Shown: positions 3,490 to 37,188, counted from the stretch's first letter. The stretch: DNA of 44,232 nucleotides from Octopus bimaculoides (GCF_001194135.2 NC_068995.1:28754680-28798911), one strand, 5' to 3'. The notes: a model not told the origin generated them from the letters alone. Numbers and translations: made by a program.

Positions 3490-4080
3490 TGTATGTGGAT
3501 ATCCTGGCTCAAGCGACTAAACTGATCAAATTCGAAAAGTCACGGGCTGACATAGCCATTCGCCTGCCCCGAAGTGTTGGCAGAAACACACACACACACA
3601 CACACAGAGTTATATATAAATATGTTTCCATGAACACAAAACGACCGGAGTCAGCGAGTCAGACAGACGTGGAAGGAGCACTCAAAGAAATAATGCTCGA
3701 CATATCTCGAGGGCCAAGTAATTTCTAAGCATTTCAGTGCTCTTCAAGAGGTCGGTGGGAGTGAAGATATCAAGGATTGCACCTGAAGTGAATATAGAGT
3801 AGATTTTAGCATGCATTGTCATGGAAGTAACAGTCTCCTGATGGTGAAGCGAACCTCTCGTCAAAAATAGTTGGAGATTAGTTTAGGAATGCTACTCCAC
3901 ATCAAACCAGACACCATCCACAAGGTCCCAGACCTCATTCATATTCTGGGGGTGGGGGAGAGACTGCATATTACAGTTGAGGGCAGAAGGTTACGATGCC
4001 ACCTACGTGGGGGAGACTGACCACTTGAGAGCTTTCTGTCTTCAACAGAAGACGGAGCCACAGGACCCACTTACTGAGAA
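3490..4080 (+). mobile_element. Decayed Tx1/L1-type ORF1 fragment (RRM-like region plus CCHC knuckle)
   Basis: Pieced frames give VGVKISRIAPEVNIE*ILACIV...HILGVGERLHITVEGRRLRCHL-GETDHLRAFC. This parallels the ORF1s at 31257-32426 (VRVEAIPPDIEVAW...RVPRCFKC) and 34945-35448 (ITVEGIPPEIDVAW...VEGRVP). Confidence 0.6.
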
Positions 4081-5099: not shown

Positions 5100-6112
5100 G
5101 GTCCGGAACTGACGTGGGAAAAAATTTCGCCTCCAGATAGGGTTAGAATGGGAGGCGGAGTTGCAGTGCTGCTTAGGAAAGGCCTGGTACGGAAGATCTT
5201 CCTGGACCCGGATGGTAAGTTTGTGGTCCTGGATGTGAGCAGTAGCGAAAATAGTGCTTTTATATTAGTCGCTGTGTACGCCCCGATAGGGGTGGGGAAC
5301 AGACGTTTGAAGGTTTTCTATTGGACGTCTTGCTCTTTAGTGCTAGTGAGCGATTGGAACGCCATATCGGACACACACCTGGATAGGATGCGGTAAACCA
5401 ATAGAAGACAGGGTGTAGGTGTAAAAGCCTCACAAACCTGCTCATTGCTTCCAACTGGCTAACTGGATTTCCCGAATGCGCCAGTATGAACAGGGTCATC
5501 AGCTCATCCATATCATATCTTGATAGAAGTAGCATTAGTTGTCCACAATTCAAAGACTTCAGCTGCACAGAGCACAAATTTGTGATCTGTACAGTCAATA
5601 AAGATACGATCCATAGGCAGGGTCCCAGTTACTGGAAGTTGAACGCATCTTTCCCGGCACCTGAAGCTTTCAGACACCGGCCTAGCAAGTTAGTCTATCG
5701 GAAGCTGTCGGGTGAAACTGTCAACAACCGATGGTGGATAGCCTTGAAACGTGAGTAGAAGCGTAATGGTTAAGAAAGAGGAATCTATAGTAGAAGGACT
5801 CTCAGTAGGACAAACTTGAAGAGGCATAGCGATCGACGTGCTGACGGCGAAATTTCCTCTTGATCAGCCCTTCAAAGACAAGCACGAAAGTTGCGTTGTC
5901 AGAGTTAGGGCACGTGTTCTAAGACATGAGATGGCTGAAAGTCATCCGACAAGCTTGGGTAGCTGAGGGGCAACGTAGCAACAACGCCACAATTTTGGTC
6001 CTTGACGGACCGAAAAGGGCACACGCTACTTGAATCCAAGACCAGTCGGAGGTAACGAATGCATACAACACTTCCGTCATCTACTACTGCCTGACTGTCG
6101 TCCCTTGTCCTG
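5100..6112 (+). mobile_element. Tx1/L1-clade ORF2 fragment (APE endonuclease and linker), decayed
   Basis: ORF 5148-5396 reads GGGVAVLL...DPDGKFVVLDV...LVAVYAP...SDWNA (GDFN-like). ORF 5486-5758 reads YLDR...TEHKFV...GPSYWKLNAS. These are APE motifs typical of Tx1/L1 ORF2. Confidence 0.8.
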
Positions 6113-6189
6113 CTTCATTATTGATCATGCTGGAGCGCTAACTCTTCCGTTTTCTCTTGGTGGCAGCTGCATGATATTTTCATCGGGCA

Positions 6190-6720
6190 TTTGTAAAAAA
6201 ATCATGCTGCTGCTGCCCAAATATGAAGAACATTATCACTCATAAATATCATCAAGCGCACACTCCCACTTGTAACTGTCGGAACCCTAAAGCTTGCCTA
6301 CTTGGACAGGCGTGTTTGATAAACTCCCTCGTATATGAGGCAGAATTCACATCAACGCTTCAAGAAAACTTAACCGAAAAGAATTACATCGTGTTATGCA
6401 AAGGCTATTTCAAAAGACGTTATGCAAAACATTCTATCTTCTTTCTAGCACATCGACAAAAGTTAAACCACTGAGTTGATTAGCTGCGTATGATGTTTGA
6501 AGAACAGCTCCACACCATATATAATCAAGTGGAAAATTGTAGACAAATCCATGCCATATTTTCATGGATCTAAGAATGAATAGGTGAAAGATCGCATAGT
6601 CTTTTTAGACCGAAGAAATCTACCACACTTGTCAATTCCATATCTGAAATTTTCAGCAAGTACAAACATATGGAGAAATTTATTTTGGTGAATTGCAGGA
6701 CATCACCCTCTCCGGATTGA
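6190..6720 (+). mobile_element. Penelope-like element (Naiad-type) linker plus GIY-YIG endonuclease fragment
   Basis: SC..PNMKNII...CNCRNPKACLLGQAC (CxCx5Cx5C) ...LVYEAE...NYIVL..YFKRRYAKH...IKWKIVDKSMPY...NSISEIFSKYKH. Confidence 0.85.
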
Positions 6721-9428: not shown

Positions 9429-9967
9429 NNNNNNNNNNNNNNNNNNNNNNNNNNNNNNNNNNNNNNNNNNNNNNNNNNNNNNNNNNNNNNNNNNNNNNNN
9501 NNNNNNNNNNNNNNNNNNNNNNNNNNNNNNNNNNNNNNNNNNNNNNNNNNNNNNNNNNNNNNNNNNNNNNNNNNNNNNNNNNNNNNNNNNNNNNNNNNNN
9601 NNNNNNNNNNNNNNNNNNNNNNNNNNNNNNNNNNNNNNNNNNNNNNNNNNNNNNNNNNNNNNNNNNNNNNNNNNNNNNNNNNNNNNNNNNNNNNNNNNNN
9701 NNNNNNNNNNNNNNNNNNNNNNNNNNNNNNNNNNNNNNNNNNNNNNNNNNNNNNNNNNNNNNNNNNNNNNNNNNNNNNNNNNNNNNNNNNNNNNNNNNNN
9801 NNNNNNNNNNNNNNNNNNNNNNNNNNNNNNNNNNNNNNNNNNNNNNNNNNNNNNNNNNNNNNNNNNNNNNNNNNNNNNNNNNNNNNNNNNNNNNNNNNNN
9901 NNNNNNNNNNNNNNNNNNNNNNNNNNNNNNNNNNNNNNNNNNNNNNNNNNNNNNNNNNNNNNNNNNN

Positions 9968-10033
<66 letters not shown>
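9968..10033. repeat. (TG)n microsatellite bordering a gap
   Basis: Direct inspection. Confidence 0.95.
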
Positions 10034-10037
<4 letters not shown>

Positions 10038-10755
10038 ATATGTGTGTAATATGTGCACGTCAATATGTATGTATGCACAAGTATGTGTGTACATGATTAT
10101 GTATGTGCTCTTTGTGCTTTTGCTATGCACATGCCATTCTCAACCATGTTTTAATTTCTACGTGTTTACGTGATCCGGGTATATGTGTGTCTGAATAGCT
10201 ACGTGTATATATGTGTGTGAGTGATTGTTTATCTCAACGTTGTTTTCTGGTATCGTTTACATGTGCGTGTATGAATGTATGTATGTGAGCGCACGCATGC
10301 TTAACTGTATATATGCCCTAAGAATATCGGTGTGTGAGATAAATGTGTACTAATATGTACATCTAGAAATCACTGGTCTTGTGTAATTATGTATATGTTC
10401 ATATATTTGGCATTTATAAAGCAATGATTAAAATATTTAGTAAATTAACGGATCGGCTTTCAAGTTATACGACACTGCTAATAGAAATCTGCTTGTGTGT
10501 GACGTAGAATTATTGTTTGTCATTTTGTTGCCCCTATCAATAAATTGTTGTATATCTATCAGAATATAAGCTGGGAAAACTTGGATTTATCCGGTTTGAA
10601 AAGGATGCATGCACTTTCGTCACTTGATATATTGATAATAAGAGGCAACGCAAGATATTTAGTATGTTAAAAGAATTTAAAGAACTCATAAAGATATTTG
10701 ATAAATTTAAATATGCCTTTTGGTATTTATAAGGAAATTATCAATATATTACCAT

Positions 10756-10937
10756 AGCGCAGGTAAGAGGTTGTGTGGTAAGGAGCTTACTTCTCAACCA
10801 CTTGGTTCCGGGTTTAGTCCCACTGCGTGGCACCTATAATCTTCTACTATAGCTTCGGGCAGACCAAAACTTTGTGAGTGGATTTAGTTGACGGAAACTG
10901 AAAGAAACCTGTTGTATATATATATATATATATATAT
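10756..10937 (+). mobile_element. tRNA-headed SINE, 5' half (runs into gap)
   Basis: TGTGTGGTAAGGAGCTTACTTCTCAACCACTTGGTTCCGGGTTTAGTCCCACTGCGTGGCACC...GACGGAAACTGAAAGAAACC then (TA)n. Confidence 0.85.
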
Positions 10938-12288
10938 NNNNNNNNNNNNNNNNNNNNNNNNNNNNNNNNNNNNNNNNNNNNNNNNNNNNNNNNNNNNNNN
11001 NNNNNNNNNNNNNNNNNNNNNNNNNNNNNNNNNNNNNNNNNNNNNNNNNNNNNNNNNNNNNNNNNNNNNNNNNNNNNNNNNNNNNNNNNNNNNNNNNNNN
11101 NNNNNNNNNNNNNNNNNNNNNNNNNNNNNNNNNNNNNNNNNNNNNNNNNNNNNNNNNNNNNNNNNNNNNNNNNNNNNNNNNNNNNNNNNNNNNNNNNNNN
11201 NNNNNNNNNNNNNNNNNNNNNNNACATCGAGTTGACATCAGCCTAATGTCATATTCACATCAAGGTGACATCGGTCCGATATGAAAATCAGGTTGGGCTG
11301 AGGTATGGTTGTTCAACTTGAGAAGTTTCAATATCTCCTTGAGCCGATTTTGCTAAATGCCTGATCTGACTCCGAAATACATTCAAGGATGAGCTAATTA
11401 ATGTATGATTAGACGTTTATACGGGTTCGACATCGGCCACATTTTATGTTCTCCATAGCATTACACCAGATCCCTGGCATGAATTGCTCTGATTCCAGCC
11501 TCACCCACCCAGCGTTTGAAAATAAAAATATAAATTTGTTTCAATTTACAGCCAATGAGGACCAGCTAAACAAACAATGCTAAATAAACAATATTAAATT
11601 TATTTTGAAGATGTAAGTGTATGAGCATCAGTTTACATGGCATGTGTATGGGAATATCTAAAAAAATCATGTAGAAACCGCTAGAAAAATTTTAGATGAA
11701 CAGTTATTTTTCTTTGCAAACATCATTTATTTTATCAACTATAACTTTGAAAAATGGCTATTTACAACACAACAAAAGTAAATCACAACATTTAAAAGTT
11801 AATAAAAATGAAGACGAAATATACTGGCCAATATACACTGTGAAACTAAGATATTTATTTAATGGTGTTAAGGTCACTTATACCACTGTGGCTATTTGTG
11901 TCAAAGTTCAACAATTATTCATATCTGCACATAAAGCCTGGTAAATAAGGAGTAATGGTATTCATTTTAGGGTTCGATTTTATGACTTGAAATTTGGGAG
12001 ATTTGTTAAAAATAAATATATTTAGAATGTGCAGAAATAGGAAAAACACATTAAACGCAAGAAATATCATCAATAAAATTGTATTTGAAACCACAGATAG
12101 GAGTATTCCTTACTAATTTGGTGAATGAGAAATTTGAATGGAAGACAAAACCATGTATGCAAAGTTATTCAGCCTATTGTTACCAATGCGTTGCTAAAAT
12201 GGATTACTTTAAAAAATTGAGGTAACCCATAAATGAGTTATCTTAATTTTCAATTTGTGCAGACCTGAGACCTGTGACAGATTCATTG

Positions 12289-22229: not shown

Positions 22230-23420
22230 GATAATGCGGTAATATGGGGATTAGTTAAGAATATTTCTACAAAAATTTCCAGATTATCCGGTAATAAAGG
22301 AAAAAAAAACCTTATAATACTGCTTTAGATAGGGCTGGATACCGTGAGAAAATTCATCAATTCTTCCAATAATAATACACATTGTACACCATCACAACAT
22401 TACGGTATGCGAACTGACTCAGATCGAGAATAAAGGCCAGGAAGAATTCGTCATGGCAATAAACTACTAACCAAAAACGCATAAACACACACACGATGCA
22501 ATAATTCTATTGCTCATAATACAGTAAATTGTTCCAATTCAATACAACACACTAGATCAAATAAGCCAAGTAACAAATATAAGAATCATGATGTCCTCTG
22601 GTACAACTCAATCTTCAGTTCACGTTTCAACAAAGATCACTGGGAAATTCTTTGCCGCTTTAGACAGATGTTTCCCTATACCAAATAGATACCATGCTAT
22701 TTTAATCGACACACCGTGAATGTATTTTACGCTAACTCTATTAATTTAGAGCAGCATATGCACCGCATAAGCAATAGTAAAATGAAACAACAGTTTAATA
22801 ACCCACCTACTGGACCCAGCAAACATAGGCATCAAAATACCAACAAAGGAGATGTAAACTGCAATGAAAAGCACCAATTAAAGCCAAATCGTGATGGTAG
22901 AAATGCTTGCGATATAGCTAACACGGTAACAACGTCGGAAAATGAAGTCAGAACTGCCATATATACAAATAGATATTATATATGCTCATGCAGAGAAAAA
23001 TCAAAATACCCATTGATGAATCTCTGCATGAATACAAATCTTGTATATAAATGTACCGTGCACACAAGGGAAAAGATGTATGTTTACATTGGGCAAACGG
23101 CTGATTCATTCAAAAATCGTTATCGCAACGATGTCGCCAGCTTCAGAAAGATCAATAAGAAACAGTCAACATCTTTGGCCCATTTTGTGTGGCGACTTAA
23201 GGAAGATCAAATTAAGTGTAACACAACTTGGTCCATATTGAGGCACGCAAAACCATATGATATCATTTCCAGGAGTACCGACTCTGCTCCGCGGAATCCC
23301 CTATCTATTCTGTGGACCAATGAAAAGTTCCTTAATAGAATTTCTGAAAGACTTTCAAGATGCCTACATGCATCTAAGTGTACTTTCGCACGATGGAGTA
23401 GGAATGAATTTGAGTAGCTG
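22230..23420 (+). mobile_element. Penelope-like element (Naiad-type) 3' portion, including open GIY-YIG frame 22716-23417
   Basis: LWYNS...LDRCFP...FNRHTVNVFY; CSCREKSKYPLMNLC; VYKCTV...YVYIGQTADSFKNRY..D..SF...TSLAHFVWRLK...TWSIL..AKPY...CLH. Confidence 0.85.
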
Positions 23421-27317: not shown

Positions 27318-29661
27318 CACTGGGCAACGAAAACAGATTTATTGTCTGCTACCCAGATAAATAGTGCTGTACTAAACTAAATCGAGTACGCTGATTCCGA
27401 ATCTGAACTCAGAATTGCATATTATACATACATACATACATACATATATATATACATACATACATACAATTTTGAGTTATGCGCATAATTATATGATAAT
27501 ACTATATCAGAATCAGAATAGTTAAGTTCAAGATAAATAATTATTATAATCATACATTAGTACTGTATGCAGTGAATTTATGTTCAAGGCAAACAGTATT
27601 ATAATATAATGGTACATAGTATATTTATGCTATGGGAATACTCACTTTATTTTTGATTGCACTTATGCATCGAGTTGGTCTTCCGTTGTAGGAACCAGCA
27701 GTAGTCACACATCCTGTGTGGATGGAACCGGCCTTGATACGTCGTTTCCATCTCAGATATGTCCTGGTGGAACCTCTTACCATGTTCATCACGAAGGGCA
27801 CCAAGATTCGTTGGAAAAAACATCGAGATGAGAATGCAAGAAGTGCATTTTAAGGGACATTCTTCTATACGTTGTTAGCATGTTGTTTATTAAATCAGCA
27901 TAGTTTTCAACTCTATGATTTCCCAGAAAGTACTGTACAACTAACACGAATGAATCCCATTGCCGTCAGCTCAACTGGATTCAGTTTACCTCTGAATTTA
28001 CTATCAGATATCAATTCTCTGATCTCGGGTCCAATGAAAATGCCTTCTTTCAGTTTTGCGTCACTTTTCTCTGCACCACATTTTACTTTTAGGTACTGGA
28101 AGCCACGACCATCGTGTGTCATTGCTTTTACAAAGTTTTTCATGAGGCCGAGTTTGATGCGAAGGGGTGGAATGAAAATCTTTTACGGGTTTAGCAGTGG
28201 TACATGCTGCACATTGTACCGACCAACTATGCGCTCATCTCTTTTAGGCCAGTCTTTTACAGTGTAATGATTGCTGACGTCGCGGCTACTTCCAACACAC
28301 AAGAAGCACATATTTTTGGTATATCCAAGCTGCAGTCCCAGGAGGAGGGAAATCACCTTTAAATCACCACAAATATTCCACTTGTGAACTGAATAATTAA
28401 CACCTTTCAGAAAGAGTTCCATCGATTCATAAGTTTCTTTCATACCGACAAAATGACTCACAGGAATGGAAGGCTTTTCATGACTATTATGTGACAACAC
28501 AGCTTTGAGGCTAACTTTTCTCGAGTCTATAAACAATTTCCATTCGTTAGCCACATGCACGTGTCCTAGTTTTTGCATGCGGACATTAACATCAGTACAG
28601 AAACAAGCATTATTTTCTTGCTTGTAAAAGACAGATAAGCCTTCATGGCGAGAACGGAAGATGGAAACTTTTGTACCTTGCTGTAGGAGATTCCGTTGCT
28701 GTAGTCTGGATCCTAAAACTTCTGTTTTCTGCTTTGACAATGTCAGATCTCTTACTAAATCGTTCAAATGTTCTTCATTAAACAATTGTGGCTCATTTTT
28801 CTTAGAATCATCTACGTACTCTTCGTCGTTAGGAGAGTCAGGGGGTTCATCGTGCGACATGTAAAGATTTCCAAGTGAAGCATGTGAGAGGGGAACTGAG
28901 ACAGGGTTCTTGAAGTCATGTTTTAGAGCCGATTTACAATCTGCATACACAAATATTGCTTTGGTTTTCTTTGAGAAACTGCTAATATTAGTCATGTAAA
29001 AGTAACATGATTGGTTGGCTCACGCCATACTATTGGTACAGCAAAATGCATTCCCTTCCGTTATCCATTCAGCCATTGTGTAAGCCCTGAGTAACGCACG
29101 GTGCAGCACATATGAGGTGCCCACCTCTTGTCTTGGTCCCAACTTTACATCCGAAATATTATTTTTAGGCAATTTTTAATTTGGTAGCAATGTTCCTCCG
29201 CTGGTCACGCGGAGCAAGTTTCCACAGACATAACAAACGTTGTCTGGGTGATTCACACAGCCTCTCTTATTCATGATCTAGCATAATGGACAGAGTTAAA
29301 ACAGTAATCACGCAGAACGAGAGATACACATACCACACGTGATGGCAGCGCAAACGACACTGATAGTTACCAAGAACATAATATGTCAGCGCCATCTATT
29401 GCTAAACTAAATGATGAACTTTCTTATTATTTGTTTTATTGCTGTTATTTCTTTAATTTTGAATTAAGACCGCTTTCATTTTATCAAATTTTATAATACG
29501 GCCTATATCTAGCCGAAAGTATAGTTATAATCTTGCGCATACGCATAACTCCAAATCCTGACGTGCTAGAACAATTTTGAGTACAGATTCGGAATCAGCA
29601 TCCTCGATTTAGTCTAAAACACCTGCTTTTACCCCAGTAGCAAAACTTTTGTTGTCCAGTG
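27318..29661 (-). mobile_element. Full-length Chapaev3 (CMC) DNA transposon, 2344 bp, TTA target-site duplication
   Basis: Termini are CACTGGGCAAC (27318) and GTTGTCCAGTG (29661). Subterminal inverted blocks read CTAAATCGAG.A.GCTGATTCCGAATCTG.ACTCA.AATTG. TTA lies at 27315-27317 and 29662-29664. The internal transposase carries Chapaev3 motifs. Confidence 0.9.
27647..29274 (-). pseudogene. Chapaev3 transposase, frameshifted
   Basis: N-terminus MNKRGCVNHPDNVCYVCG...GDQDKRWAPHMCC...VPIVWREPTNH. ORF 28183-28995 has WKLFIDS..SLKAVL.HN...ICGDLKVI..LLGLQLGYTK.MCFLC. Then MKNFVKAM..KLKEGIF.GP, and a C-terminus LKMHFLHSHLD...DEHG.RFHQDI..ME..YQG...MCDYCW. Confidence 0.9.
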
Positions 29662-29985: not shown

Positions 29986-30750
29986 CGCAGCAGATATCAA
30001 ACGCAGTAGATATTAAAAAAAAAAAGAACCTAATTACAAAATAAGAAAAGGAAAAACATGTGAATTACTAAACCAATTTGTAAAGGCCTCGCTGAGAAAA
30101 TTTGAAGGAAACAAGAGATGCATTCTCAAAGAGAAAACATCCACATATCTCTCATTCGTCCCAGTTTCAACCCTCCAGAACACAGTTTCCACTCCCCTTT
30201 GATCTGGTTTCAACTCTAAAAATTACTGTCACACACACACACTCACTGTATATGTATGTATATGTACATGTATATGTATGCATATGTACATGTATATACA
30301 TATAAACATATGTATATTTCTATATGTAGCTTATTTTTTTATTCTTTATTCTTTTACTCGTTTACTTGCTTCACTCATTTGACTGCGGCCATGCTGGAGC
30401 ATTGCCTTAAAGGGTTTTAGTCGAAGGAATAGATCCCAGGTCTTATTCTTTTTAAGCCTGGTACTTATTCTAGCGTAATCTTTTGCCGAACCGCTAAGTT
30501 ATGGGGACGTAAACACATCAACACTGGTTGTGAAGCGCAGCGGGGTGGGGTGGGGTGGGGATACAAACACAGACATAAAGACATACACATATAAATATAC
30601 ACATAAATATACGACGAGCTTCTTTTAGTTTCCGTCTACGAAATCCACTCACAAGCCTTGTTGCCCCGAAGCTATAGTAGAAGACACCTGCCCCAGGTAC
30701 CACGTAGCAAGATTGAACACGAGGCAATATGACTGGGAAGCAAGCTTCTT

Positions 30751-31054
30751 TATTTCTTTCTTTTAAATTGCCATAAAGGCATTACACCGAGGGAGACACT
30801 ACAACACATGTGTGGACATATAACAATTAAAAATATGAAAATAAAATATGATATTATGAATGGCTTCAGCAAAACTTATTGTCTTCAATACTCCTTCCAT
30901 CTTTATGACCACCCTCCTCCGACCAGCTCCGACGACGACGACGACGACGACGACAACTCAGACCCGTCAAGTTCTGAGTACATCTTCTAAGCAACACAAA
31001 GAACTACGTCCAACTCTTACAAAATCCAGACAGTAAATAACCCGACGCATGCGC
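30751..31054 (-). mobile_element. 304-bp internally deleted Tx1-like mini-element (B2): 5' UTR, ORF1 start and 3' tail
   Basis: 30870-31054 is highly similar to 32330-32494, and 30751-30860 is highly similar to 31070-31175. It is bounded by 15-bp TSDs at 30736-30750 and 31055-31069. Confidence 0.9.
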
Positions 31055-31069
31055 GGAAGCAAGCTTCTT

Positions 31070-32494
31070 TATTTCTTTTAAATTGCTATAAAGGCATTAC
31101 ACAGAGGGGGACACTATAACACATGTGGGGACGTATAACAATTAAAAATATAAAAATAAAATATGATATAATGAGTGACACATGAAATGAACATGAAAAA
31201 CGAATTAAAATATGATAGCATGAATGATATCTGAAAATGATATTATGAAGAGTGTGCTACTCATCCCACACTGAGTAACCCCACTCGCTGCCTCTAAGGC
31301 CTAAGTCCTTTTTCTCCTTCAGTCCAATCCTTTTCTCCCTCTCTCCATCACTTAGTGACATCATTCTCTCCGCCATGCATTCAATACCTTTTTCACCGGG
31401 GGTGGGGGGGCGTCTTCTAAATTTTGTGGTGTTTGTTCTTTCTTGTGGGGTGGGTGGGTTTAGTGTCTGTATGGGGAGGGTGGGTCTGAGTGGTCTTGGG
31501 TGGGATGGAGTTGGACTGGGGTACCACATCATACTCAGAGTTTTTCTTTTTCTCTCTTTCTCCGTCTGCTCTCTAACTTTCCATTCTTCCTCCTTTTCCT
31601 CCTTTCCTCCGTCTGTCTTTTCTTCCTCTCTTTTCTCTTCCGTCTCCACAACTGTTTCTTCAGTCATTGTCTTCTGTAGAGGGCAGTATGCTCTAATGTA
31701 ACTCTTTTGGCCACATTTAAAACAACGTGGTACTCTGCTCTTTACCCACACCCTCGGCACAATTTCCCCTAACGTCACCGTCTCTGCCAAGTTCTCCAGT
31801 TGATCCTCCTCCCTCTGAATAATGAGTACAAGTGTCCTTCCTTTCAAGCCTCCTTCTTCCGTTTCTGTGGCTTGGAGGACAGCCACCTTCTCGCTTCCAA
31901 CAAGGACAGCTGCCGCTACCCAAGCCACTTCTATATCCGGTGGAATTGCTTCTACCCTCACCTTGGAAGTCTTTCTTCTCAGGTATGTGGGCAGAAGTAC
32001 TACTTCATCTGTTTTCACCACCACACTCGCCAGCCTCCTCGCCTCCTCTACTGTCCTAAATTGGACGACCATTGTCCTACATCTTCTTCCTTTGGTTATG
32101 TACGTTATCTCCTTTGTTCATTCCCTCAGCGTCTTTTCCATTTCTGCCTCCACCTGTTCTGCCTTTTTACCTTTCAACGAGTACACCTTATAGGTGATCG
32201 TTTTCTTCTCCACCCTCTCCATAATTCCTTTGGGGAGCAACAACTTCACATCGCCACCCACCTTCTGAGCCATCTTCTCGTACTCCTTCATACCAGTCAA
32301 GTTCAGCTCCCTTCGCTTCATCTCCTTCGCCTCAGCAAAACTCCTTGTCTTCAATACTCCGTCTATCTTTATGACCGCCCTTACCAGCTCCTCCTCCTCC
32401 GACGACAACTCAAGGTCTGAGTACATCTAAGCAATACAAAAAACTACGTCCGACTCTAACAAAATCCAGACAGGAAATAACCCGACGCATGCGC
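31070..32494 (-). mobile_element. 1425-bp ORF1-only Tx1-like non-autonomous retroelement (B1)
   Basis: It has a 5' UTR starting GCGCATGCGTCGGG, a single ORF1, and a ~190-bp T-rich 3' UTR ending AAAGAAATAAA. There is no ORF2. TSDs are at 31055-31069 and 32495-32509. Confidence 0.85.
31257..32426 (-). pseudogene. Tx1/L1-type ORF1 protein (389 codons, one in-frame TGA): RRM-like domain plus CCHC knuckle
   Basis: ORFs 32118-32426 and 31257-32072 are in the same frame, separated by TGA at 32118-32120 (LRE*TKEITY; W in the paralogue LRPIWDDIVY). Motifs include VVQFRTVEEARR, VRVEAIPPDI and CFKCGQKSYIRAYC (H replaced by Y). Confidence 0.8.
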
Positions 32495-32529
32495 GGAAGC
32501 GAGCTTCTTACCACAATGTCACGCTTATG

Positions 32530-32699: not shown

Positions 32700-33560
32700 A
32701 AACGTTTCGTTTGCAATTAAGGTATTTAGATAAATTAGACATTACCATGGGGGCACTTTTAATCCTTTGTCACCCGATTTATACATAGTGTTTTTTACGG
32801 AACTTTAATTTCTTAGGGTTTTATGGAAAAGTAAGAAAATAGGACTAGTTAGACAACTTAGGGGTTGTTTCAGATGTTCAGATGATAATTTCGTCCCAAA
32901 TTATAGTTTCATTGAATGATTATTATTTAAAATTTACCTTAGGGATCTGAATGCTAGTAGGAGTTTTAAGGATGTTAATAAGATTATTTATCTGGACATT
33001 GCGGGTGAAATTTGTAACATATTTATCGTTACGAATATGTACAATATGACTAGCCAATTTGAGTTTCAAGTATCGGTGAAACCTTATGCTAATAGTTGCA
33101 CGCTAAATAGGAAAGATGCAGTGTGCTTGCGGCACAAATTGTAATATTTTCAAAAGTAACTAATAAAAATGAACTATTGCTTAAAGTTACTAATTATCTT
33201 ATTAGACTTACTGTTAAGCAAGGTTTTAATGCCAAAAAGATTAATTCGGCAATTTAATTATAAACTCGATTTACTCAATGACATTTTGAGTTCGGGATTA
33301 TACCAAGCTTGTAATTGAGTTGTGAACTGGAAGCTTAGAGAGATATTTTTTATGTTTTAACCATAGCACATTGATGCATTGATTTGAATGTTTGCTTGAA
33401 TTGTTTGGATAGCATAACTCAACCAGTTAGTATTGCCTCTTTTTTCTTATTGCATAACAATGCTCACTCTCATTTTGTTCCTAAATTTGCCTCTGTGAGT
33501 TCCGGTCAGATGTAGAATTCTTTCTTTCTAAATAGGAGGGGCCTGAATACAATGGCTTTC
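32700..33560 (-). mobile_element. Highly decayed Penelope-like (Naiad-type) fragment
   Basis: The minus strand gives WYNPEL, ISYF, KYVTNFT..NV and IIWD fragments in the expected order, followed by CGAAACGTT near 32700-32710. Confidence 0.4.
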
Positions 33561-33786: not shown

Positions 33787-34485
33787 AGTCTTTGGTGTGG
33801 CAATGTTACAGAGGAGCCCTACCCGTTCGGGATAAGCTCACCAGACACAGCCACCCTAGGCCGTCGGCCTGTCCAAGATGCGAGCGGGACGTAGAAACTA
33901 TTGTTCAGTGTCCGGGTGTATCAGAAGTGTGGACTTATGCAGAACACCTGTTGTCAGATGGAAGAAAAGTACAGCTATCACCTGAAGCAATTCTAAATAT
34001 TAACCCACCAGATTTCCTTACGGAAGAAGGTAAGAATTGTTTTCTCGTAGTAGTAACAATTGTGAGAGAGGTGATATGAAAGTCAAGGATGAAAGGTATT
34101 GTGGCAGACAGCTTCGTCTCCGGCCTCGCTTTGGTGAATGTTTTCACTTTTCACCTGAAAAAGAAGGTGGGGCTGGAAAGGAAGTGTCTGTTAGTATGTT
34201 CAAAAGATGGACGTGTGTAGCACGTATGTTGGGAGTGAAATGCCCTGCGTGAGCACGTCATAGAGATTACCAAAGGTGTCGGTAGAGAAGACAGGGCTCG
34301 TGGGGTTGGAGCATGCCTGTCTTTTAAACCCCATATTGTCTTTCATTGTATGTAATTGTCTTTTATATCCCATTCGATTTTTCATTTTGTCATTTTAAAT
34401 TTTTATTACCATTTGATTGTAAATGACCCTAGATCATATTGTATTGTCCTCTCTATGTGCACCTGTAATAGGTAATACAGAAAAA
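33787..34485 (+). mobile_element. 5'-truncated Tx1/L1-clade element (D): ORF2 C-terminal zinc-finger region, 3' UTR and A-tail
   Basis: ORF 33792-34079 reads WQCYRGALPVRDKL.RH...CPRCERDVETI..C (zf-RVT-like). The T-rich 3' UTR ends TTGTCCTCTCTATGTGCACCTGTAATAGGTAATACAGAAAAA. Confidence 0.8.
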
Positions 34486-34498
34486 GCAACGAAACGTT

Positions 34499-36179
34499 CG
34501 CTTCGAACCTACTGTGCTATTTTGTCTAATGCGTTTGTGAAATATTGAGTGTTGTGTGCTGCTTTGCAGCAGTTTGGGTGTTTGCGTGTGTTTGTTTGTG
34601 CTTTCTCTTCTCGTAAGAGGAGGGATAGCTTGGTAAAGGATGTCTGAAGAAAATTATAGTTTCTCGGACATATCATCGTCCGAGGAGGAGTTGCTGGAGG
34701 CGGTCCAGAAAATGGATCATAAACTGAGAACGAAGAAAAGAAATTTTGCTGATGCAGCAATGTGTAAGGAGACTGAATTGAATATTGAGGAGAAAGGAAA
34801 ACACAGAAGTGAAATGAAACGAGATAGGATCGAAGTAAAGCTGTCAACCCCGCAAGAAGTAAGAAACAGGATTAAGGAAAAACAATAAACTATCAAACCT
34901 TTTCGATAAGTAAAAGAAAGATTGATGTCGTCACGACGGAACAAGTGGAAAAGGTGCTAAGGCCGATTTGGGATGACATAGTGTACCTGGCGAGAGGTTC
35001 AACGTTCGGCATAGTGGAAGTAAGATTTCGGAATGCAGCAGCAGCAAGAAAACAGGCAGCGACTACAATACAGAGTGAAGAAGTGGTGTTTTTGCCCACG
35101 TATAGAGGTATCAGAACAACGAGAATTACTGTCGAAGGAATCCCACCAGAAATAGATGTGGCTTGGGTGGCAGATGCTATCCTCTTTGGATATGAGGACA
35201 ACATAGTGGTGCTCCAGGCCGCGAAAAGGGATTGCGTAAACTGGAGAGGACAATCACTGAATATGATAGTACAGGGATCGAATGAAACGTTGGAAAGGAT
35301 CACGAAAACGATAACTATGGAAGAAACAGTAATGACAGTCAGGGTGGAAGGAAGAGTTCCACACCGCTTTAATTGTGGCCTGACGGGCCACATTAGCGCA
35401 GACTGCACGATAAGATCAAGAAAACCGGAGGGAAAAACATCCAGATAATATGGAGGAGGATAAAGAAGAGCGCCGCGGAAAGGAAGAAACCAAAAAAGAA
35501 GAGGAAGTTGCGAAAACAGAGGAAAAATGGGGAAAAAGCTACAGGAAGAAAAAGGAAAAAGGCAAGTGAACTAAACTGTAAACCCCATTCCATACCCATC
35601 CCACCCACTCCCTCTCAGACCCACCCTCTCTCTGCAGACACCAAGCCTACCCGTTCCCATCCGACACAAAACAAAAGACAAACACACACAAAGAAGCTCA
35701 AAACCCCTCCCCCAAGGAAAAAAAGGAGGAAAAAGTGCAGAGCGTACATGTCATTTAGTGATGAACTGTTGAATGAAACGTCGACATGGGATGATCTGAA
35801 GTTTGTTGGAACTGCTGAGTTTGATAATATTGAGGAGTATTACATGTGTGTGGTGCCTAATAAGAAGCAGGAGGGGAGAATACTTGCGTTTAAGGTCGGA
35901 TATAGTTCTTGGGAGGTGGACTGCAGCTGGAATTCACTCCCAGGTTTTACAACTTATGATAAGTGGTTAGAGGAGACAGGAATTAATCTTTTAGAAGGTA
36001 GAAAAGGTAGAAAATGAGGCTACTTGTAAGTGGGGCGAGTGGTTCCATTTCCATTTTTCATAATCATGTTTTTATGCATTATATCATACATTTTTGTTTT
36101 ATTTTCAATGTTTTATGTCCCACGTGTTTTACTGCATTGTCCCCTCTGTGTGTCCTGGTATGGGAAATAAAAAAAAAGC
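34499..36179 (+). mobile_element. ~1.68-kb ORF1-only Tx1-like non-autonomous retroelement (C)
   Basis: It has a 5' UTR of ~140 bp, ORF1 pieces spanning 34640-36017, and a ~160-bp 3' UTR ending TTGTCCCCTCTGTGTGTCCTGGTATGGGAAATAAAAAAAAA. CAACGAAACGTT flanks it at 34487-34498 and 36180-36191. Confidence 0.8.
34640..36017 (+). pseudogene. Tx1/L1-type ORF1 (RRM plus CCHC plus C-terminal extension), two frameshifts
   Basis: ORFs 34640-34888, 34945-35448 and 35508-36017 lie in three different frames. They are colinear with the B1 ORF1: SSSEEELLEAVQKMD, VEVRFRNAAAARK, FLPTYRG, ITVEGIPPEIDVAWVA, RFNCGLTGHISADC. Confidence 0.8.
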
Positions 36180-37188
36180 CAACGAAACGTTTGGTGAGGA
36201 AATGACCAGTGAGTGGTCAGCTCGAAAATGGTTTAAACGATTTTACAGTGGAGATCTGAGCCTTGAAGATCGTAAGCGTAGTGGACAGCCACCTGTCATC
36301 GATGACGGTCAATTAAAGACCGTCACTGAGAAAGATCTACGTAAAACCATTCGAAAACTGGCAAACGAACTTCAAATTAGCCAGAAAACTACCTGCAACC
36401 ATTCGCATGCGATCGGAAATACAAAACAGCTCGACAAATGGGTACCACACGATTTGAATGAAAATCACAAAATGCGCAGATATGACATTTGCTCGTTGCT
36501 TCTTCTCCGTAACCAGACCGATCCATTTCTCAACTGTATTGTAAGTTGCGATGAAAAGTGAATTCTGTACAATAATAAAAAGAGAAACGTTCTTCGCAAT
36601 GGTTGGACCAAAATGCAGCACCGAAAACCTTCCATAAATCCGAGTTCTTCAAAAAGAAGGTTATGGTGGCTGTTTGATGGTGTACTGCTGGACTCATCTA
36701 CTATAGCTTCTTAAAACCCGGAAAAACCATTACTGCAGAAATATGTTGTTATGAAATTGCCAAAATGAAAGAAAAACTGTTACTCCTCCAACCCAGACTG
36801 GTCAACAGAAGAAGGTCAATCATTCTTCATGACTATGCTCGACCACACGTTTCACTAATGACGCTCCAGAAGTTGAGGAAACTTGGCTACGAAGTTCTTC
36901 CTCCCCGGCCCAAGCTTATTCCCCAGATCTTTCTCCTACCGACTACCACTTTTTCAAGCACTTTGATGGTTTCCAGCGATAGAAGGAGTTCAAAAACCAA
37001 ACTGATGTTGAAAGTGCGTTCAAAGAGTTCATCAGTTCCAGAACTCCAGATTTTTATGTTACTGGAATAAACAAACTTGTAACTCGTTGGCAAAAATGTG
37101 TTGATTGTAATGGTACTTATTTTGATGAATAAAATTTCCGCATTGTTGAAATATATTGTGATGGATTTCATATTTCAAAACTTTTATT
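36180..37188 (+). mobile_element. Mariner (Hsmar1/cecropia-like) transposase fragment lacking its N-terminus; stop at 37130-37132
   Basis: NETFG...RKWFKRF..GDLSLED..RSGQP...KWVPHDL...CDEK*ILY...HDYARPH...PDLSPTDYHFFKH...RWQKCVDCNGTYFDE*. These are the WVPHEL, D,D34D and YSPDL-type motifs. The 3' TIR probably lies in the gap. Confidence 0.9.

What the first reader, a model, noticed from the sequence alone, without database searches (positions are those of the whole stretch)
31070..32494. ORF1-only (half-L1-like) Tx1 elements with intact ends
Seen: B1 (1425 bp) and C (34499-36179) each have a 5' UTR, one ORF1, a short 3' UTR with an A-rich tail and flanking direct repeats, but no trace of ORF2. 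B1's 389-codon frame has just one premature stop (at a W position). The two ORF1s are clearly homologous yet well diverged. Known: HAL1 elements are ORF1-only L1 derivatives mobilised in trans. Inference: this is an old, diversified lineage of non-autonomous Tx1 elements that retains ORF1p, possibly for cis RNP formation or to compete for the partner's ORF2p. Each lineage would inherit target specificity from its partner.
Basis: partly seen in the sequence, partly recalled or inferred. Interest (0 to 1): 0.8.

Follow-up and report, generated by a model that had tools for sequence, protein, structure and literature searches.

The report
Octopus LINE elements that lack ORF2
Two retrotransposon copies in this octopus sequence carry only the first of the two usual genes, and copies with the same build elsewhere in octopus genomes suggest an established kind of dependent "half-element", comparable to HAL1 in mammals and HeT-A in flies, rather than accidental damage.

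Summary
B1 (32494→31070, minus strand) and C (34499-36180, plus strand) are complete retrotransposon insertions. Each has a 5'UTR, one gag-like ORF1, a 160-190 nt 3'UTR with an A-rich end, and target-site duplications. Neither shows any detectable ORF2.

The host is Octopus bimaculoides. Full-length relatives found in O. vulgaris and O. sinensis are 5.3-5.6 kb. They carry ORF1 followed by an APE-RT-zinc-finger ORF2 and share the same conserved 3' terminus.

Two further ORF2-less elements turned up elsewhere. One in O. sinensis has flanking duplications and a fully open 384-codon ORF1. The other sits on a 1.7-kb contig assembled from a sequencing run of unnamed species. B1, C and the O. sinensis element are colinear from the ORF1 end into the 3'UTR. 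They also share a one-residue ORF1 deletion that three full-length families lack.

Corrections:
- B1's frame hides two compensating frameshifts and a His→Tyr change in the zinc knuckle.
- The stop is not clearly at a W position.
- C's ORF1 is split over three frames.
- Copies with other internal deletions (B2 and one in L001) also exist.

Tx1 clade membership, copy numbers, dN/dS and trans-mobilisation were not tested. I file this as a new member of a known kind.

The parts
32495..32509 (-). Upstream copy of the 15-bp target-site duplication of B1 (AAGAAGCTCGCTTCC), part of the SINE-like repeat's head
32427..32494 (-). B1 5'UTR (68 nt)
31257..32426 (-). B1 ORF1: 389 codons plus terminal stop. 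Acidic Ser/Glu-rich N-terminus, RRM-like core, one zinc knuckle, Glu/Lys-rich and Pro-rich linker
32118..32120 (-). The single in-frame stop (TGA) in B1 ORF1
31683..31724 (-). B1 zinc knuckle CFKCGQKSYIRAYC (CCHC with His→Tyr). Coordinates derived by hand from the ORF listing
   Evidence: compare the intact knuckles
31440..31530 (-). Pro-rich linker DNA conserved with C and L013. B1 reads it in a different frame from its relatives, implying compensating frameshifts
31070..31256 (-). B1 3'UTR. The last ~120 nt are the terminus shared with full-length relatives, and it ends aaaagaaataa
31055..31069 (-). Middle copy of the target-site duplication (AAGAAGCTTGCTTCC), between B1 and B2
30751..31054 (-). 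B2: short internally deleted B-type element in tandem with B1, made of ~190 nt of 5' end plus ~110 nt of 3' end, with no ORF
30736..30750 (-). Third copy of the target-site duplication, followed by the rest of the host SINE-like repeat (30735→~30350)
33787..34487 (+). 5'-truncated element with the ORF2 C-terminus (zf-RVT; 64% aa identity to L002 ORF2 residues 973-1110) and a 3'UTR, in tandem upstream of C. A candidate partner type
34488..34498 (+). AACGAAACGTT, upstream copy of C's flanking repeat
34499..34639 (+). C 5'UTR (141 nt)
34640..36017 (+). C ORF1, decayed into three frames: 34640-34888, 34894-35448 (RRM-like core and knuckle RFNCGLTGHISADC), and 35508-36017 (linker and C-terminal tail)
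36018..36180 (+). C 3'UTR with the conserved terminus and an A9 run
36181..36191 (+). AACGAAACGTT, downstream copy of C's flanking repeat. It lies in frame inside a mariner ORF (codons A-N-E-T-F)

Best explanation
B1 and C belong to ORF2-less, ORF1-retaining, non-autonomous lineages of a site-specific L1/Tx1-like LINE superfamily of octopods.

**Shown.**
- Both are complete insertions with their own 5' ends, the superfamily's conserved ~120-nt 3' terminus and target-site duplications.
- The full-length relatives sampled carry a 1130-aa APE-RT-zinc-finger ORF2, starting within about 55 nt of the ORF1 stop.
- The same ORF2-less build recurs at other loci, including one in O. sinensis.

**Inferred.**
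- An ancestor lost ORF2 cleanly, from about its start codon to a few tens of nucleotides past its stop.
- The resulting RNA kept being copied into the genome by ORF2 protein supplied in trans by full-length relatives. These recognise the shared 3' terminus and impose their target choice, whose core is GAA(A/G)C(G)TT. That core occurs in two SINE-like repeat heads and in a mariner.
- Master copies kept ORF1 open, presumably because ORF1p coats its own RNA in cis.

B1 is a fairly young dead copy and C is an older one. B2 in the window, and the truncated element in L001, are most simply further internal deletions of such elements.
For: **Intact ends and duplications.** B1 and C both have them.

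**No ORF2 signal.** tblastn at E<=10 finds nothing in B1 or C, yet it detects the adjacent ORF2 fragment.

**Full-length references.**
- L002 has 5279-bp tandem units with ORF1 then ORF2. ORF2 matches Exo_endo_phos, RVT_1 and zf-RVT.
- L003, L010 and L014 are also full length.

**Independent ORF2-less elements.**
- L013 (9458-11056) has the duplication AGAAA(C/T)GTTAGCACGCCG and a 384-codon open ORF1 with an intact knuckle. No ORF2 lies within 10 kb.
- L012 has about 680 nt between the knuckle and the 3' end, then a B-type target and a second element's 5' end.

**Shared junction and shared indel.**
- B1, C and L013 align colinearly from the ORF1 end into the 3'UTR.
- L013 keeps GGTAAGCGATG, a 10/11 match to the full-length ORF1-stop/ORF2-start motif.
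- L013, B1, C and P0004 share a one-residue deletion absent from three full-length families. L013 is 44-45% identical to B1, C and P0004, against 34-40% to the full-length families.

**Open ORF1 despite divergence.** L013's ORF1 is open although it is only 42-46% identical to B1. This is hard to explain without selection in master copies.

**Partner link.**
- C shares its target and tandem position with the ORF2-bearing fragment.
- C's terminus resembles L002's, and L013's terminus ...CTTCGT...TAAAGAAATC resembles that of the same-species full-length L014.

**Precedent.** HAL1 is a non-autonomous L1 derivative that encodes only ORF1p (PMC5753468). ORF1-only telomeric Jockey-clade families are known in Drosophila (PMC13534243).
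Against: - No close copies of the B or C families themselves could be retrieved. Amplification of each family in its ORF2-less form is inferred from sister families, not counted.
- B1 is about as similar to the full-length L002 ORF1 (42%) as to C (37%). An exclusive ORF1-only clade is therefore not demonstrated, and no tree was built because the script machine was lost.
- Breakpoints could not be placed to the nucleotide against a same-family full-length element. The alignment to full-length junctions is ambiguous.
- Internal deletions with other breakpoints (B2, L001) show that the superfamily also produces deletion derivatives that do not keep ORF1.
- B1's ORF1p is probably defective: a stop, the His→Tyr change, and two compensating frameshifts.
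- B1, C and L013 lack a detectable version of the C-terminal domain found in full-length ORF1 proteins.
Confidence: 0.7

Rival explanations
1. ORF2 was lost independently and repeatedly in each family (B, C, L013-type), each from its own full-length parent. A site-preferring mechanism or selection for ORF1 retention would favour such losses, so there is no single old ORF1-only lineage.
For: - HAL1 arose several times (PMC5753468).
- In Drosophila telomeric elements, ORF2 was lost in dozens of lineages (PMC13534243).
- Distances among B1, C and the full-length L002 ORF1 are star-like at 37-42%.
- The superfamily readily makes internal deletions, as B2 and the L001 element show.
Against: - The junction is colinear in three families.
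- They share a one-residue ORF1 deletion relative to three full-length families.
- No sampled full-length family is closer than about 42% to any ORF2-less element.
Confidence: 0.2
2. B1 and C are one-off genomic deletions that removed ORF2 from full-length insertions after integration.
For: Post-insertion deletion would also leave the ends and duplications intact. Within the window each structure is seen only once.
Against: - Both elements, plus L013 and L012 at unrelated loci (L013 in another species), have lost ORF2 so that the ORF1 end abuts the 3'UTR.
- Two random deletions of 3.4 kb with both ends within tens of nucleotides of the ORF2 borders are very unlikely. This is an argument from reasoning, not a computed probability.
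Confidence: 0.04
3. They are retrotransposed copies of a spliced transcript of full-length elements, like SpIREs of human L1. The GGTAAGT at the ORF1/ORF2 boundary would be the splice donor, and ORF2 would be removed as an intron.
For: - A perfect 5'-splice-site-like GGTAAGT lies between the ORF1 stop and the ORF2 ATG in L002, L010 and L014, and GTAAGT overlaps the ORF1 stop in L003.
- Spliced L1 copies are known (PMC5860796).
Against: - L013 retains GGTAAGCGATG. Use of that donor would have removed this sequence.
- No good acceptor was seen at the start of the 3'UTR (by eye only).
- ORF1 divergence from every sampled full-length family argues against recent derivation.
Confidence: 0.05
4. The ORF1 sequences are host genes domesticated from a LINE gag, as L1TD1 is, rather than mobile elements.
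For: Several octopus gene models contain this ORF1 (P0001-P0007, P0016).
Against: - The copies have target-site duplications and LINE 5' and 3' ends, and they sit in tandem at target sites.
- Many are decayed.
- The gene models are chimeras with unrelated domains.
Confidence: 0.01

Closest known systems
HAL1 (half-L1) of mammals
   Same: A non-autonomous LINE derivative that keeps the 5' end, ORF1 and the 3' end, lacks ORF2, and is taken to be mobilised in trans by the autonomous relative. It arose more than once (PMC5753468, citing Bao and Jurka 2010).
   Different: HAL1 derives from vertebrate L1, which I recall as having a coiled-coil/Transposase_22-type ORF1p and no strict target choice. 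The octopus ORF1 matches no Pfam family, has an RRM-like core plus one CCHC knuckle, and the elements insert at specific sequences.
HeT-A and other ORF1-only telomeric Jockey-clade retrotransposons of Drosophila
   Same: Target-specialised LINEs that form head-to-tail arrays. Many families have lost ORF2 and depend on the ORF2 protein of related families, and ORF1-only lineages can give rise to new ORF1-only lineages (PMC13534243).
   Different: They belong to a different LINE clade (Jockey), a different target (chromosome ends) and a different phylum. There is no evidence here of any host benefit.
Target-specific Tx1-clade LINEs (Tx1 in Tx1D, Keno in U2 snRNA genes, Kibi/Koshi in microsatellites, Tx1-Mar in a mariner of crocodilians)
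   Same: The full-length relatives have APE-RT-zinc-finger ORF2s. They insert at defined sequences: SINE-like repeat heads, a mariner and a (TTA)n microsatellite. This matches the clade's described behaviour (PMC4494074).
   Different: Clade membership was not tested by RT phylogeny. In the papers I searched I found no ORF1-only derivatives described for Tx1-clade elements.
Short internally deleted LINE derivatives such as Bov-A from Bov-B
   Same: B2 (window 30751-31054) and the L001 element keep only the 5' and 3' parts of the parent. Such non-autonomous LINEs are described in PMC4494074.
   Different: B1 and C keep a whole ORF1, so they are not mere end-to-end fusions.

Membership tests
ORF1-only non-autonomous LINE (HAL1/HeT-A kind) | Complete LINE 5' and 3' termini with target-site duplication, showing insertion by retrotransposition | tested here: met
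   B1 has a 15-bp duplication derived from a SINE-like repeat's head. C has AACGAAACGTT on both sides. L013 has an 18-bp duplication.
ORF1-only non-autonomous LINE (HAL1/HeT-A kind) | ORF1 present, ORF2 absent | tested here: met
   tblastn with a 1132-aa full-length ORF2 finds no hit in B1 or C at E<=10, and none in L013 within 10 kb either side at E<=1e-3.
ORF1-only non-autonomous LINE (HAL1/HeT-A kind) | The same ORF2-less architecture in several copies at different loci, showing propagation in that form | tested here: inconclusive
   Four ORF2-less elements with ORF1 were found (B1, C, L013, L012), from O. bimaculoides, O. sinensis and one run of unnamed species. B1, C and L013 have a colinear junction. 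No second copy of the B or C family proper could be retrieved, and no genome census was possible.
ORF1-only non-autonomous LINE (HAL1/HeT-A kind) | Autonomous relatives with ORF2 that share the 3' terminus | tested here: met
   L002, L003, L010 and L014 are full length. The last ~80-120 nt are alignable among full-length and ORF2-less elements.
ORF1-only non-autonomous LINE (HAL1/HeT-A kind) | ORF1 kept under purifying selection within the ORF2-less lineage | tested here: inconclusive
   L013's ORF1 is open for 384 codons, and B1's has one stop, despite only 42-46% identity between them. No dN/dS was computed.
ORF1-only non-autonomous LINE (HAL1/HeT-A kind) | Mobilisation in trans by a partner's ORF2 protein | not testable with these tools
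   Indirect only: C shares its target and tandem position with an ORF2-bearing fragment, and the 3' termini are similar.
HAL1 proper (L1-derived) | ORF1 of the vertebrate L1 type (Transposase_22) | tested here: not met
   No Pfam family matches beyond a weak zf-CCHC hit. These elements are an analogue of HAL1, not a member.
Tx1 clade of non-LTR retrotransposons | ORF2 with an N-terminal APE endonuclease, RT and a C-terminal zinc-binding domain (in full-length relatives) | tested here: met
   L002's ORF2 matches Exo_endo_phos, RVT_1 and zf-RVT. This architecture is shared with L1 and does not separate Tx1 from L1.
Tx1 clade of non-LTR retrotransposons | RT sequence falls inside the Tx1 clade in a phylogeny with reference elements | not tested
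   No reference RT sequences were at hand and the script machine was lost. O. vulgaris is reported to hold 13 recently active L1-Tx1 families (PMC13282606), but no link to these elements was made.
Tx1 clade of non-LTR retrotransposons | Preference for specific target sequences | tested here: met
   B1 and B2 sit at the same SINE-like repeat head site, and L012 has a similar target. L013 is in a second such repeat's head. C and the ORF2 fragment sit at AACGAAACGTT. L003 is in (TTA)n.
Spliced retrotransposed copies (SpIRE kind) | The deletion junction coincides with a splice donor and acceptor of the parent | tested here: not met
   L013 retains the GGTAAGCGATG motif, which use of that donor would have removed.

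The most novel reading that the evidence does not exclude
Octopods host a long-lived two-component LINE system like the Drosophila HeT-A/TART system. Site-specific Tx1-like elements have spawned ORF1-only lineages that persist and diversify for tens of millions of years. These lineages track the 3' ends and target motif of autonomous partners. Their shortened ORF1p, which lacks the partner's C-terminal domain, is selected because it promotes their own RNA's access to the partner's ORF2p or helps direct insertion into SINE-like repeat heads. If so, target specialisation would predispose LINEs in general to ORF2 loss.
Probability: 0.2. Interest if true: 0.65.

Novelty: new member of a known kind. 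Interest (0 to 1): 0.45.

Why it matters
ORF1-only LINE derivatives are known from mammalian L1 (HAL1) and from Drosophila telomeric elements. In Drosophila, loss of ORF2 appears tied to target specialisation.

A parallel case in a mollusc, in a different LINE group that targets SINE-like repeat heads, a mariner and microsatellites, would suggest a general rule: target-specific LINEs tend to split into autonomous and ORF1-only partners.

It would also matter for annotation of repeat-rich octopus genomes. Several octopus gene models are chimeras that contain this ORF1.

Tried and rejected
- **ORF2 fragment as a protein query.** The search for homologous proteins with the 95-aa fragment found nothing.
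- **Loci for the closest relatives of B1 and C.** Look-ups for P0004, P0006 and P0026 failed because these proteins have no contig on record. The closest relatives of B1 and C could therefore not be placed in the genome.
- **C's 3' ORF segment as the C-terminal domain.** I suspected that C's segment (35750-36017) is the C-terminal domain seen in full-length ORF1 proteins. hhalign against a seven-sequence profile gave 0.2% probability. BLASTP against the corresponding L013 segment gave E=0.22. The idea is dropped as unsupported.
- **Splicing at the conserved GGTAAGT.** I considered splicing as the cause of ORF2 loss and rejected it as the main explanation because L013 keeps the motif.
- **Short direct repeats flanking ORF2.** Deletion between GGTAAGTG and GGTGAGG could not be evaluated without same-family full-length elements.
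- **L004-L009 contigs (P0011 family).** They end inside the linker and are uninformative about ORF2. L011 is likewise too short.
- **Fold search.** The ORF1 core model (pLDDT 83.7) gave no significant PDB match. The best hit was the tandem RRMs of IMP3 at E=0.014, so 'RRM-like' remains only suggestive.
- **Tree and dN/dS.** Both were planned but the script machine was lost.

Full report
**What is in the window.** The window is draft eukaryotic sequence with nine runs of N and about 35% G+C. Named protein relatives of the ORF in question all come from octopods. Most are from Octopus bimaculoides, so I take that species as the source.

**B1.** B1 lies on the minus strand from 32494 to 31070.
- The 5'UTR is 68 nt.
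- One frame runs 32426→31257 (389 codons plus stop), interrupted only by TGA at 32120-32118.
- The 3'UTR is 187 nt and ends aaaagaaataa.
- B1 is flanked by AAGAAGCTCGCTTCC (32509-32495) and AAGAAGCTTGCTTCC (31069-31055).

Aligning four other copies of the local SINE-like repeat shows that GTGGTAAGAAGCTTGCTTCCCAACC is contiguous in the repeat's head. The flanking repeat is therefore a genuine 15-bp target-site duplication.

**B2.** Directly downstream on the same strand lies B2 (31054→30751). It is made of about 190 nt of B-type 5' end joined to about 110 nt of 3' end. A third copy of the 15-mer and the rest of the SINE-like repeat follow it.

**C.** C lies on the plus strand, 34499-36180.
- It has a 141-nt 5'UTR and a 160-nt 3'UTR with an A9 run.
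- Its ORF1 is now split over three frames.
- AACGAAACGTT lies on both sides. The 10-mer AACGAAACGT occurs three times in the window against 0.04 expected.
- Downstream is the interior of a mariner ORF (HTH_48), and the repeat reads in frame there.
- Upstream is a 5'-truncated element (33787-34487) with the zf-RVT end of an ORF2 and its own 3'UTR.

**The ORF.** B1 and C ORF1 are 37% identical. Pfam recognises nothing except a weak zinc knuckle in C. An AlphaFold model of the B1 core, built from a 22-sequence alignment, is confident (pLDDT 83.7). It consists of beta-alpha-beta units followed by the knuckle. The best PDB match is the tandem RRMs of IMP3, but only at E=0.014, so the RRM-like nature is suggestive and not shown.

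B1's frame is less pristine than it looks.
- Its knuckle has Tyr in place of His.
- In the Pro-rich linker, the frame used by C, by P0006 and by the O. sinensis element is B1's other frame. This implies two compensating frameshifts.
- The stop aligns with Q, L or I in relatives, not clearly with W.

**Full-length relatives.** A profile search of 1.84 billion representative proteins found 676 ORF1 homologues. The named ones are from O. vulgaris, O. sinensis, O. bimaculoides and Argonauta hians. Fetching their loci gave four full-length references.
- **L002 (O. vulgaris)** holds a tandem array of 5279-bp units that are 99% identical. Each has ORF1 followed after TAAGGTAAGTG by the ATG of ORF2. 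An intact 1132-aa copy of ORF2 matches Exo_endo_phos, RVT_1 and zf-RVT.
- **L014 (O. sinensis)** is a similar array.
- **L003 (O. sinensis)** is a full-length element inside a (TTA)n microsatellite.
- **L010 (contig from run SRR11869391)** shows an ORF1 running into GGTAAGTCATG and the start of ORF2.

The window's ORF2 fragment is 64% identical to L002's ORF2 C-terminus. The same query finds nothing in B1 or C at E<=10. All elements, full-length or not, share a conserved 3' terminus of about 80-120 nt.

**Are B1 and C one-offs?** I could not search the genome itself, so I judged this from other sampled loci.
- **L013 (O. sinensis, 9458-11056, 1599 bp)** has a 5'UTR and a completely open 384-codon ORF1 with an intact CCHC knuckle. 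About 330 nt of non-ORF sequence follow, ending in the conserved terminus. An 18-bp duplication, AGAAA(C/T)GTTAGCACGCCG, lies inside the head of a second SINE-like repeat. There is no ORF2 within 10 kb.
- **L012 (contig from run SRR11869391)** has a decayed ORF1, only about 680 nt between the knuckle and the 3' end, then AGAAACTTGCCTCC (the B-type target) and the 5' end of another element.
- **L001 (O. bimaculoides)** has a 0.9-kb element with a 13-bp duplication. ORF1 codons up to about 212 are joined to the 3'UTR.

Of seven outside loci that could be read, three lack ORF2.

The stretches from the ORF1 end into the 3'UTR of B1, C and L013 align colinearly. L013 keeps GGTAAGCGATG, a 10/11 match to the full-length ORF1/ORF2 boundary. 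In the ORF1 core, L013, B1, C and P0004 share a one-residue deletion that L002, L014 and L003 lack. L013 is 44-45% identical to B1, C and P0004, against 34-40% to the full-length families.

These points favour ORF2 loss before these families diverged, or at least propagation in the ORF2-less state. They argue against post-insertion accidents. The support is limited. B1 is about as close to L002's ORF1 (42%) as to C (37%). No tree or dN/dS could be computed after the script machine was lost. Alignment of the junction to full-length elements is ambiguous.

**How it most likely works.**

Shown:
- The ORF2-less elements carry the superfamily's 3' terminus and insert with duplications at defined sequences.
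- C shares its site, in tandem, with an ORF2-bearing element.

Inferred:
- Full-length relatives supply ORF2 protein in trans. It recognises the shared 3' end and nicks a target whose core, GAA(A/G)C(G)TT, is common to the duplications of B, L012, L013 and C and to the 5' junction of L002.
- The 3' termini of C and L013 resemble those of the full-length L002 and same-species L014 respectively, although the ORF1 proteins are far apart. This is what tail matching between a dependent element and its partner would predict.
- ORF1 remains open in L013, and nearly so in B1, despite only 42-46% identity. This suggests that master copies need ORF1p, most simply for coating their own RNA.
- The full-length ORF1 proteins have a C-terminal domain that I could not detect in B1, C or L013. 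The dependent lineages may therefore encode a shortened protein.

**Comparison with what is known.** The closest analogues are HAL1 of mammals (PMC5753468) and HeT-A-like telomeric elements of Drosophila. In Drosophila, about 40% of telomeric families are ORF1-only, and ORF1-only lineages give rise to new ones (PMC13534243).

Target-specific insertion, including into a mariner and into microsatellites, is characteristic of the Tx1 clade (PMC4494074). L1-Tx1 families are reported as recently active in O. vulgaris (PMC13282606). I did not test clade membership by RT phylogeny.

In the papers I searched I found no description of ORF1-only derivatives for Tx1-type elements. I therefore rate this as a new member of a known kind, of moderate interest.

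Noticed in passing
L002 11331-11347; L014 10977-10991; L010 ~1852-1866; L003 11805-11813; L013 10901-10911: Full-length relatives keep TAA-GGTAAGT-N-ATG between the ORF1 stop and the ORF2 start. The heptamer is identical to a consensus 5' splice site. The ORF2-less L013 still has GGTAAGCGATG. Its role (splicing, U1 binding, or ORF2 translation) is unknown.
   Followed up: partly
window 31440-31530 (-), 35585-35665 (+); L013 10500-10590: The DNA of the Pro-rich linker is about 75-80% identical between B1, C and L013, although the neighbouring coding DNA is not alignable by blastn. B1 reads it in a different frame. This hints at a constraint on the nucleotide sequence rather than on the protein.
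   Followed up: partly
window 32702-32711 (-): A third AACGAAACGT lies here (3 hits against 0.04 expected). On the minus strand it is preceded by gtgcccccatggtaatgtc...aaata, which looks like a very short 3'-end fragment of a related element.
   Followed up: partly
window 30736-30750, 31055-31069, 32495-32509; L012 1540-1553; L013 9440-9457 and 11057-11074: The B-type and L013-type families insert into the heads of two different SINE-like repeats. All target duplications seen share the core GAA(A/G)C(G)TT, which suggests one endonuclease specificity used by several families.
   Followed up: partly
window 5115-6250 (+), 3531-3999 (+): APE and RT pieces of a more distant LINE lie here (34-42% aa identity to L002's ORF2), with a weak ORF1-like match upstream. 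This is probably another Tx1/L1-like element that does carry ORF2.
   Followed up: no
window 36181-~37100 (+): A decayed mariner transposase ORF (HTH_48, HTH_32) is interrupted by C at codons A-N-E-T-F. Its 5' part was not found upstream of the tandem pair.
   Followed up: partly
L002 4445-19184; L014 8019-16257: Full-length elements form head-to-tail arrays. In L002 the units are 99% identical, so the family was active or homogenised recently in O. vulgaris.
   Followed up: partly
proteins P0001, P0003, P0007, P0016: Several public octopus gene models are chimeras or fragments containing this retrotransposon ORF1. One is fused to a C2H2 zinc-finger array and one to an ISXO2-like transposase.
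   Followed up: no
window 22716-23417 (+) and 28183-28995 (-): Two further long ORFs (233 and 270 aa) have no significant Pfam match. The first contains a motif (YIGQT...) reminiscent of GIY-YIG nucleases of Penelope-like elements. That resemblance is from memory only.
   Followed up: no
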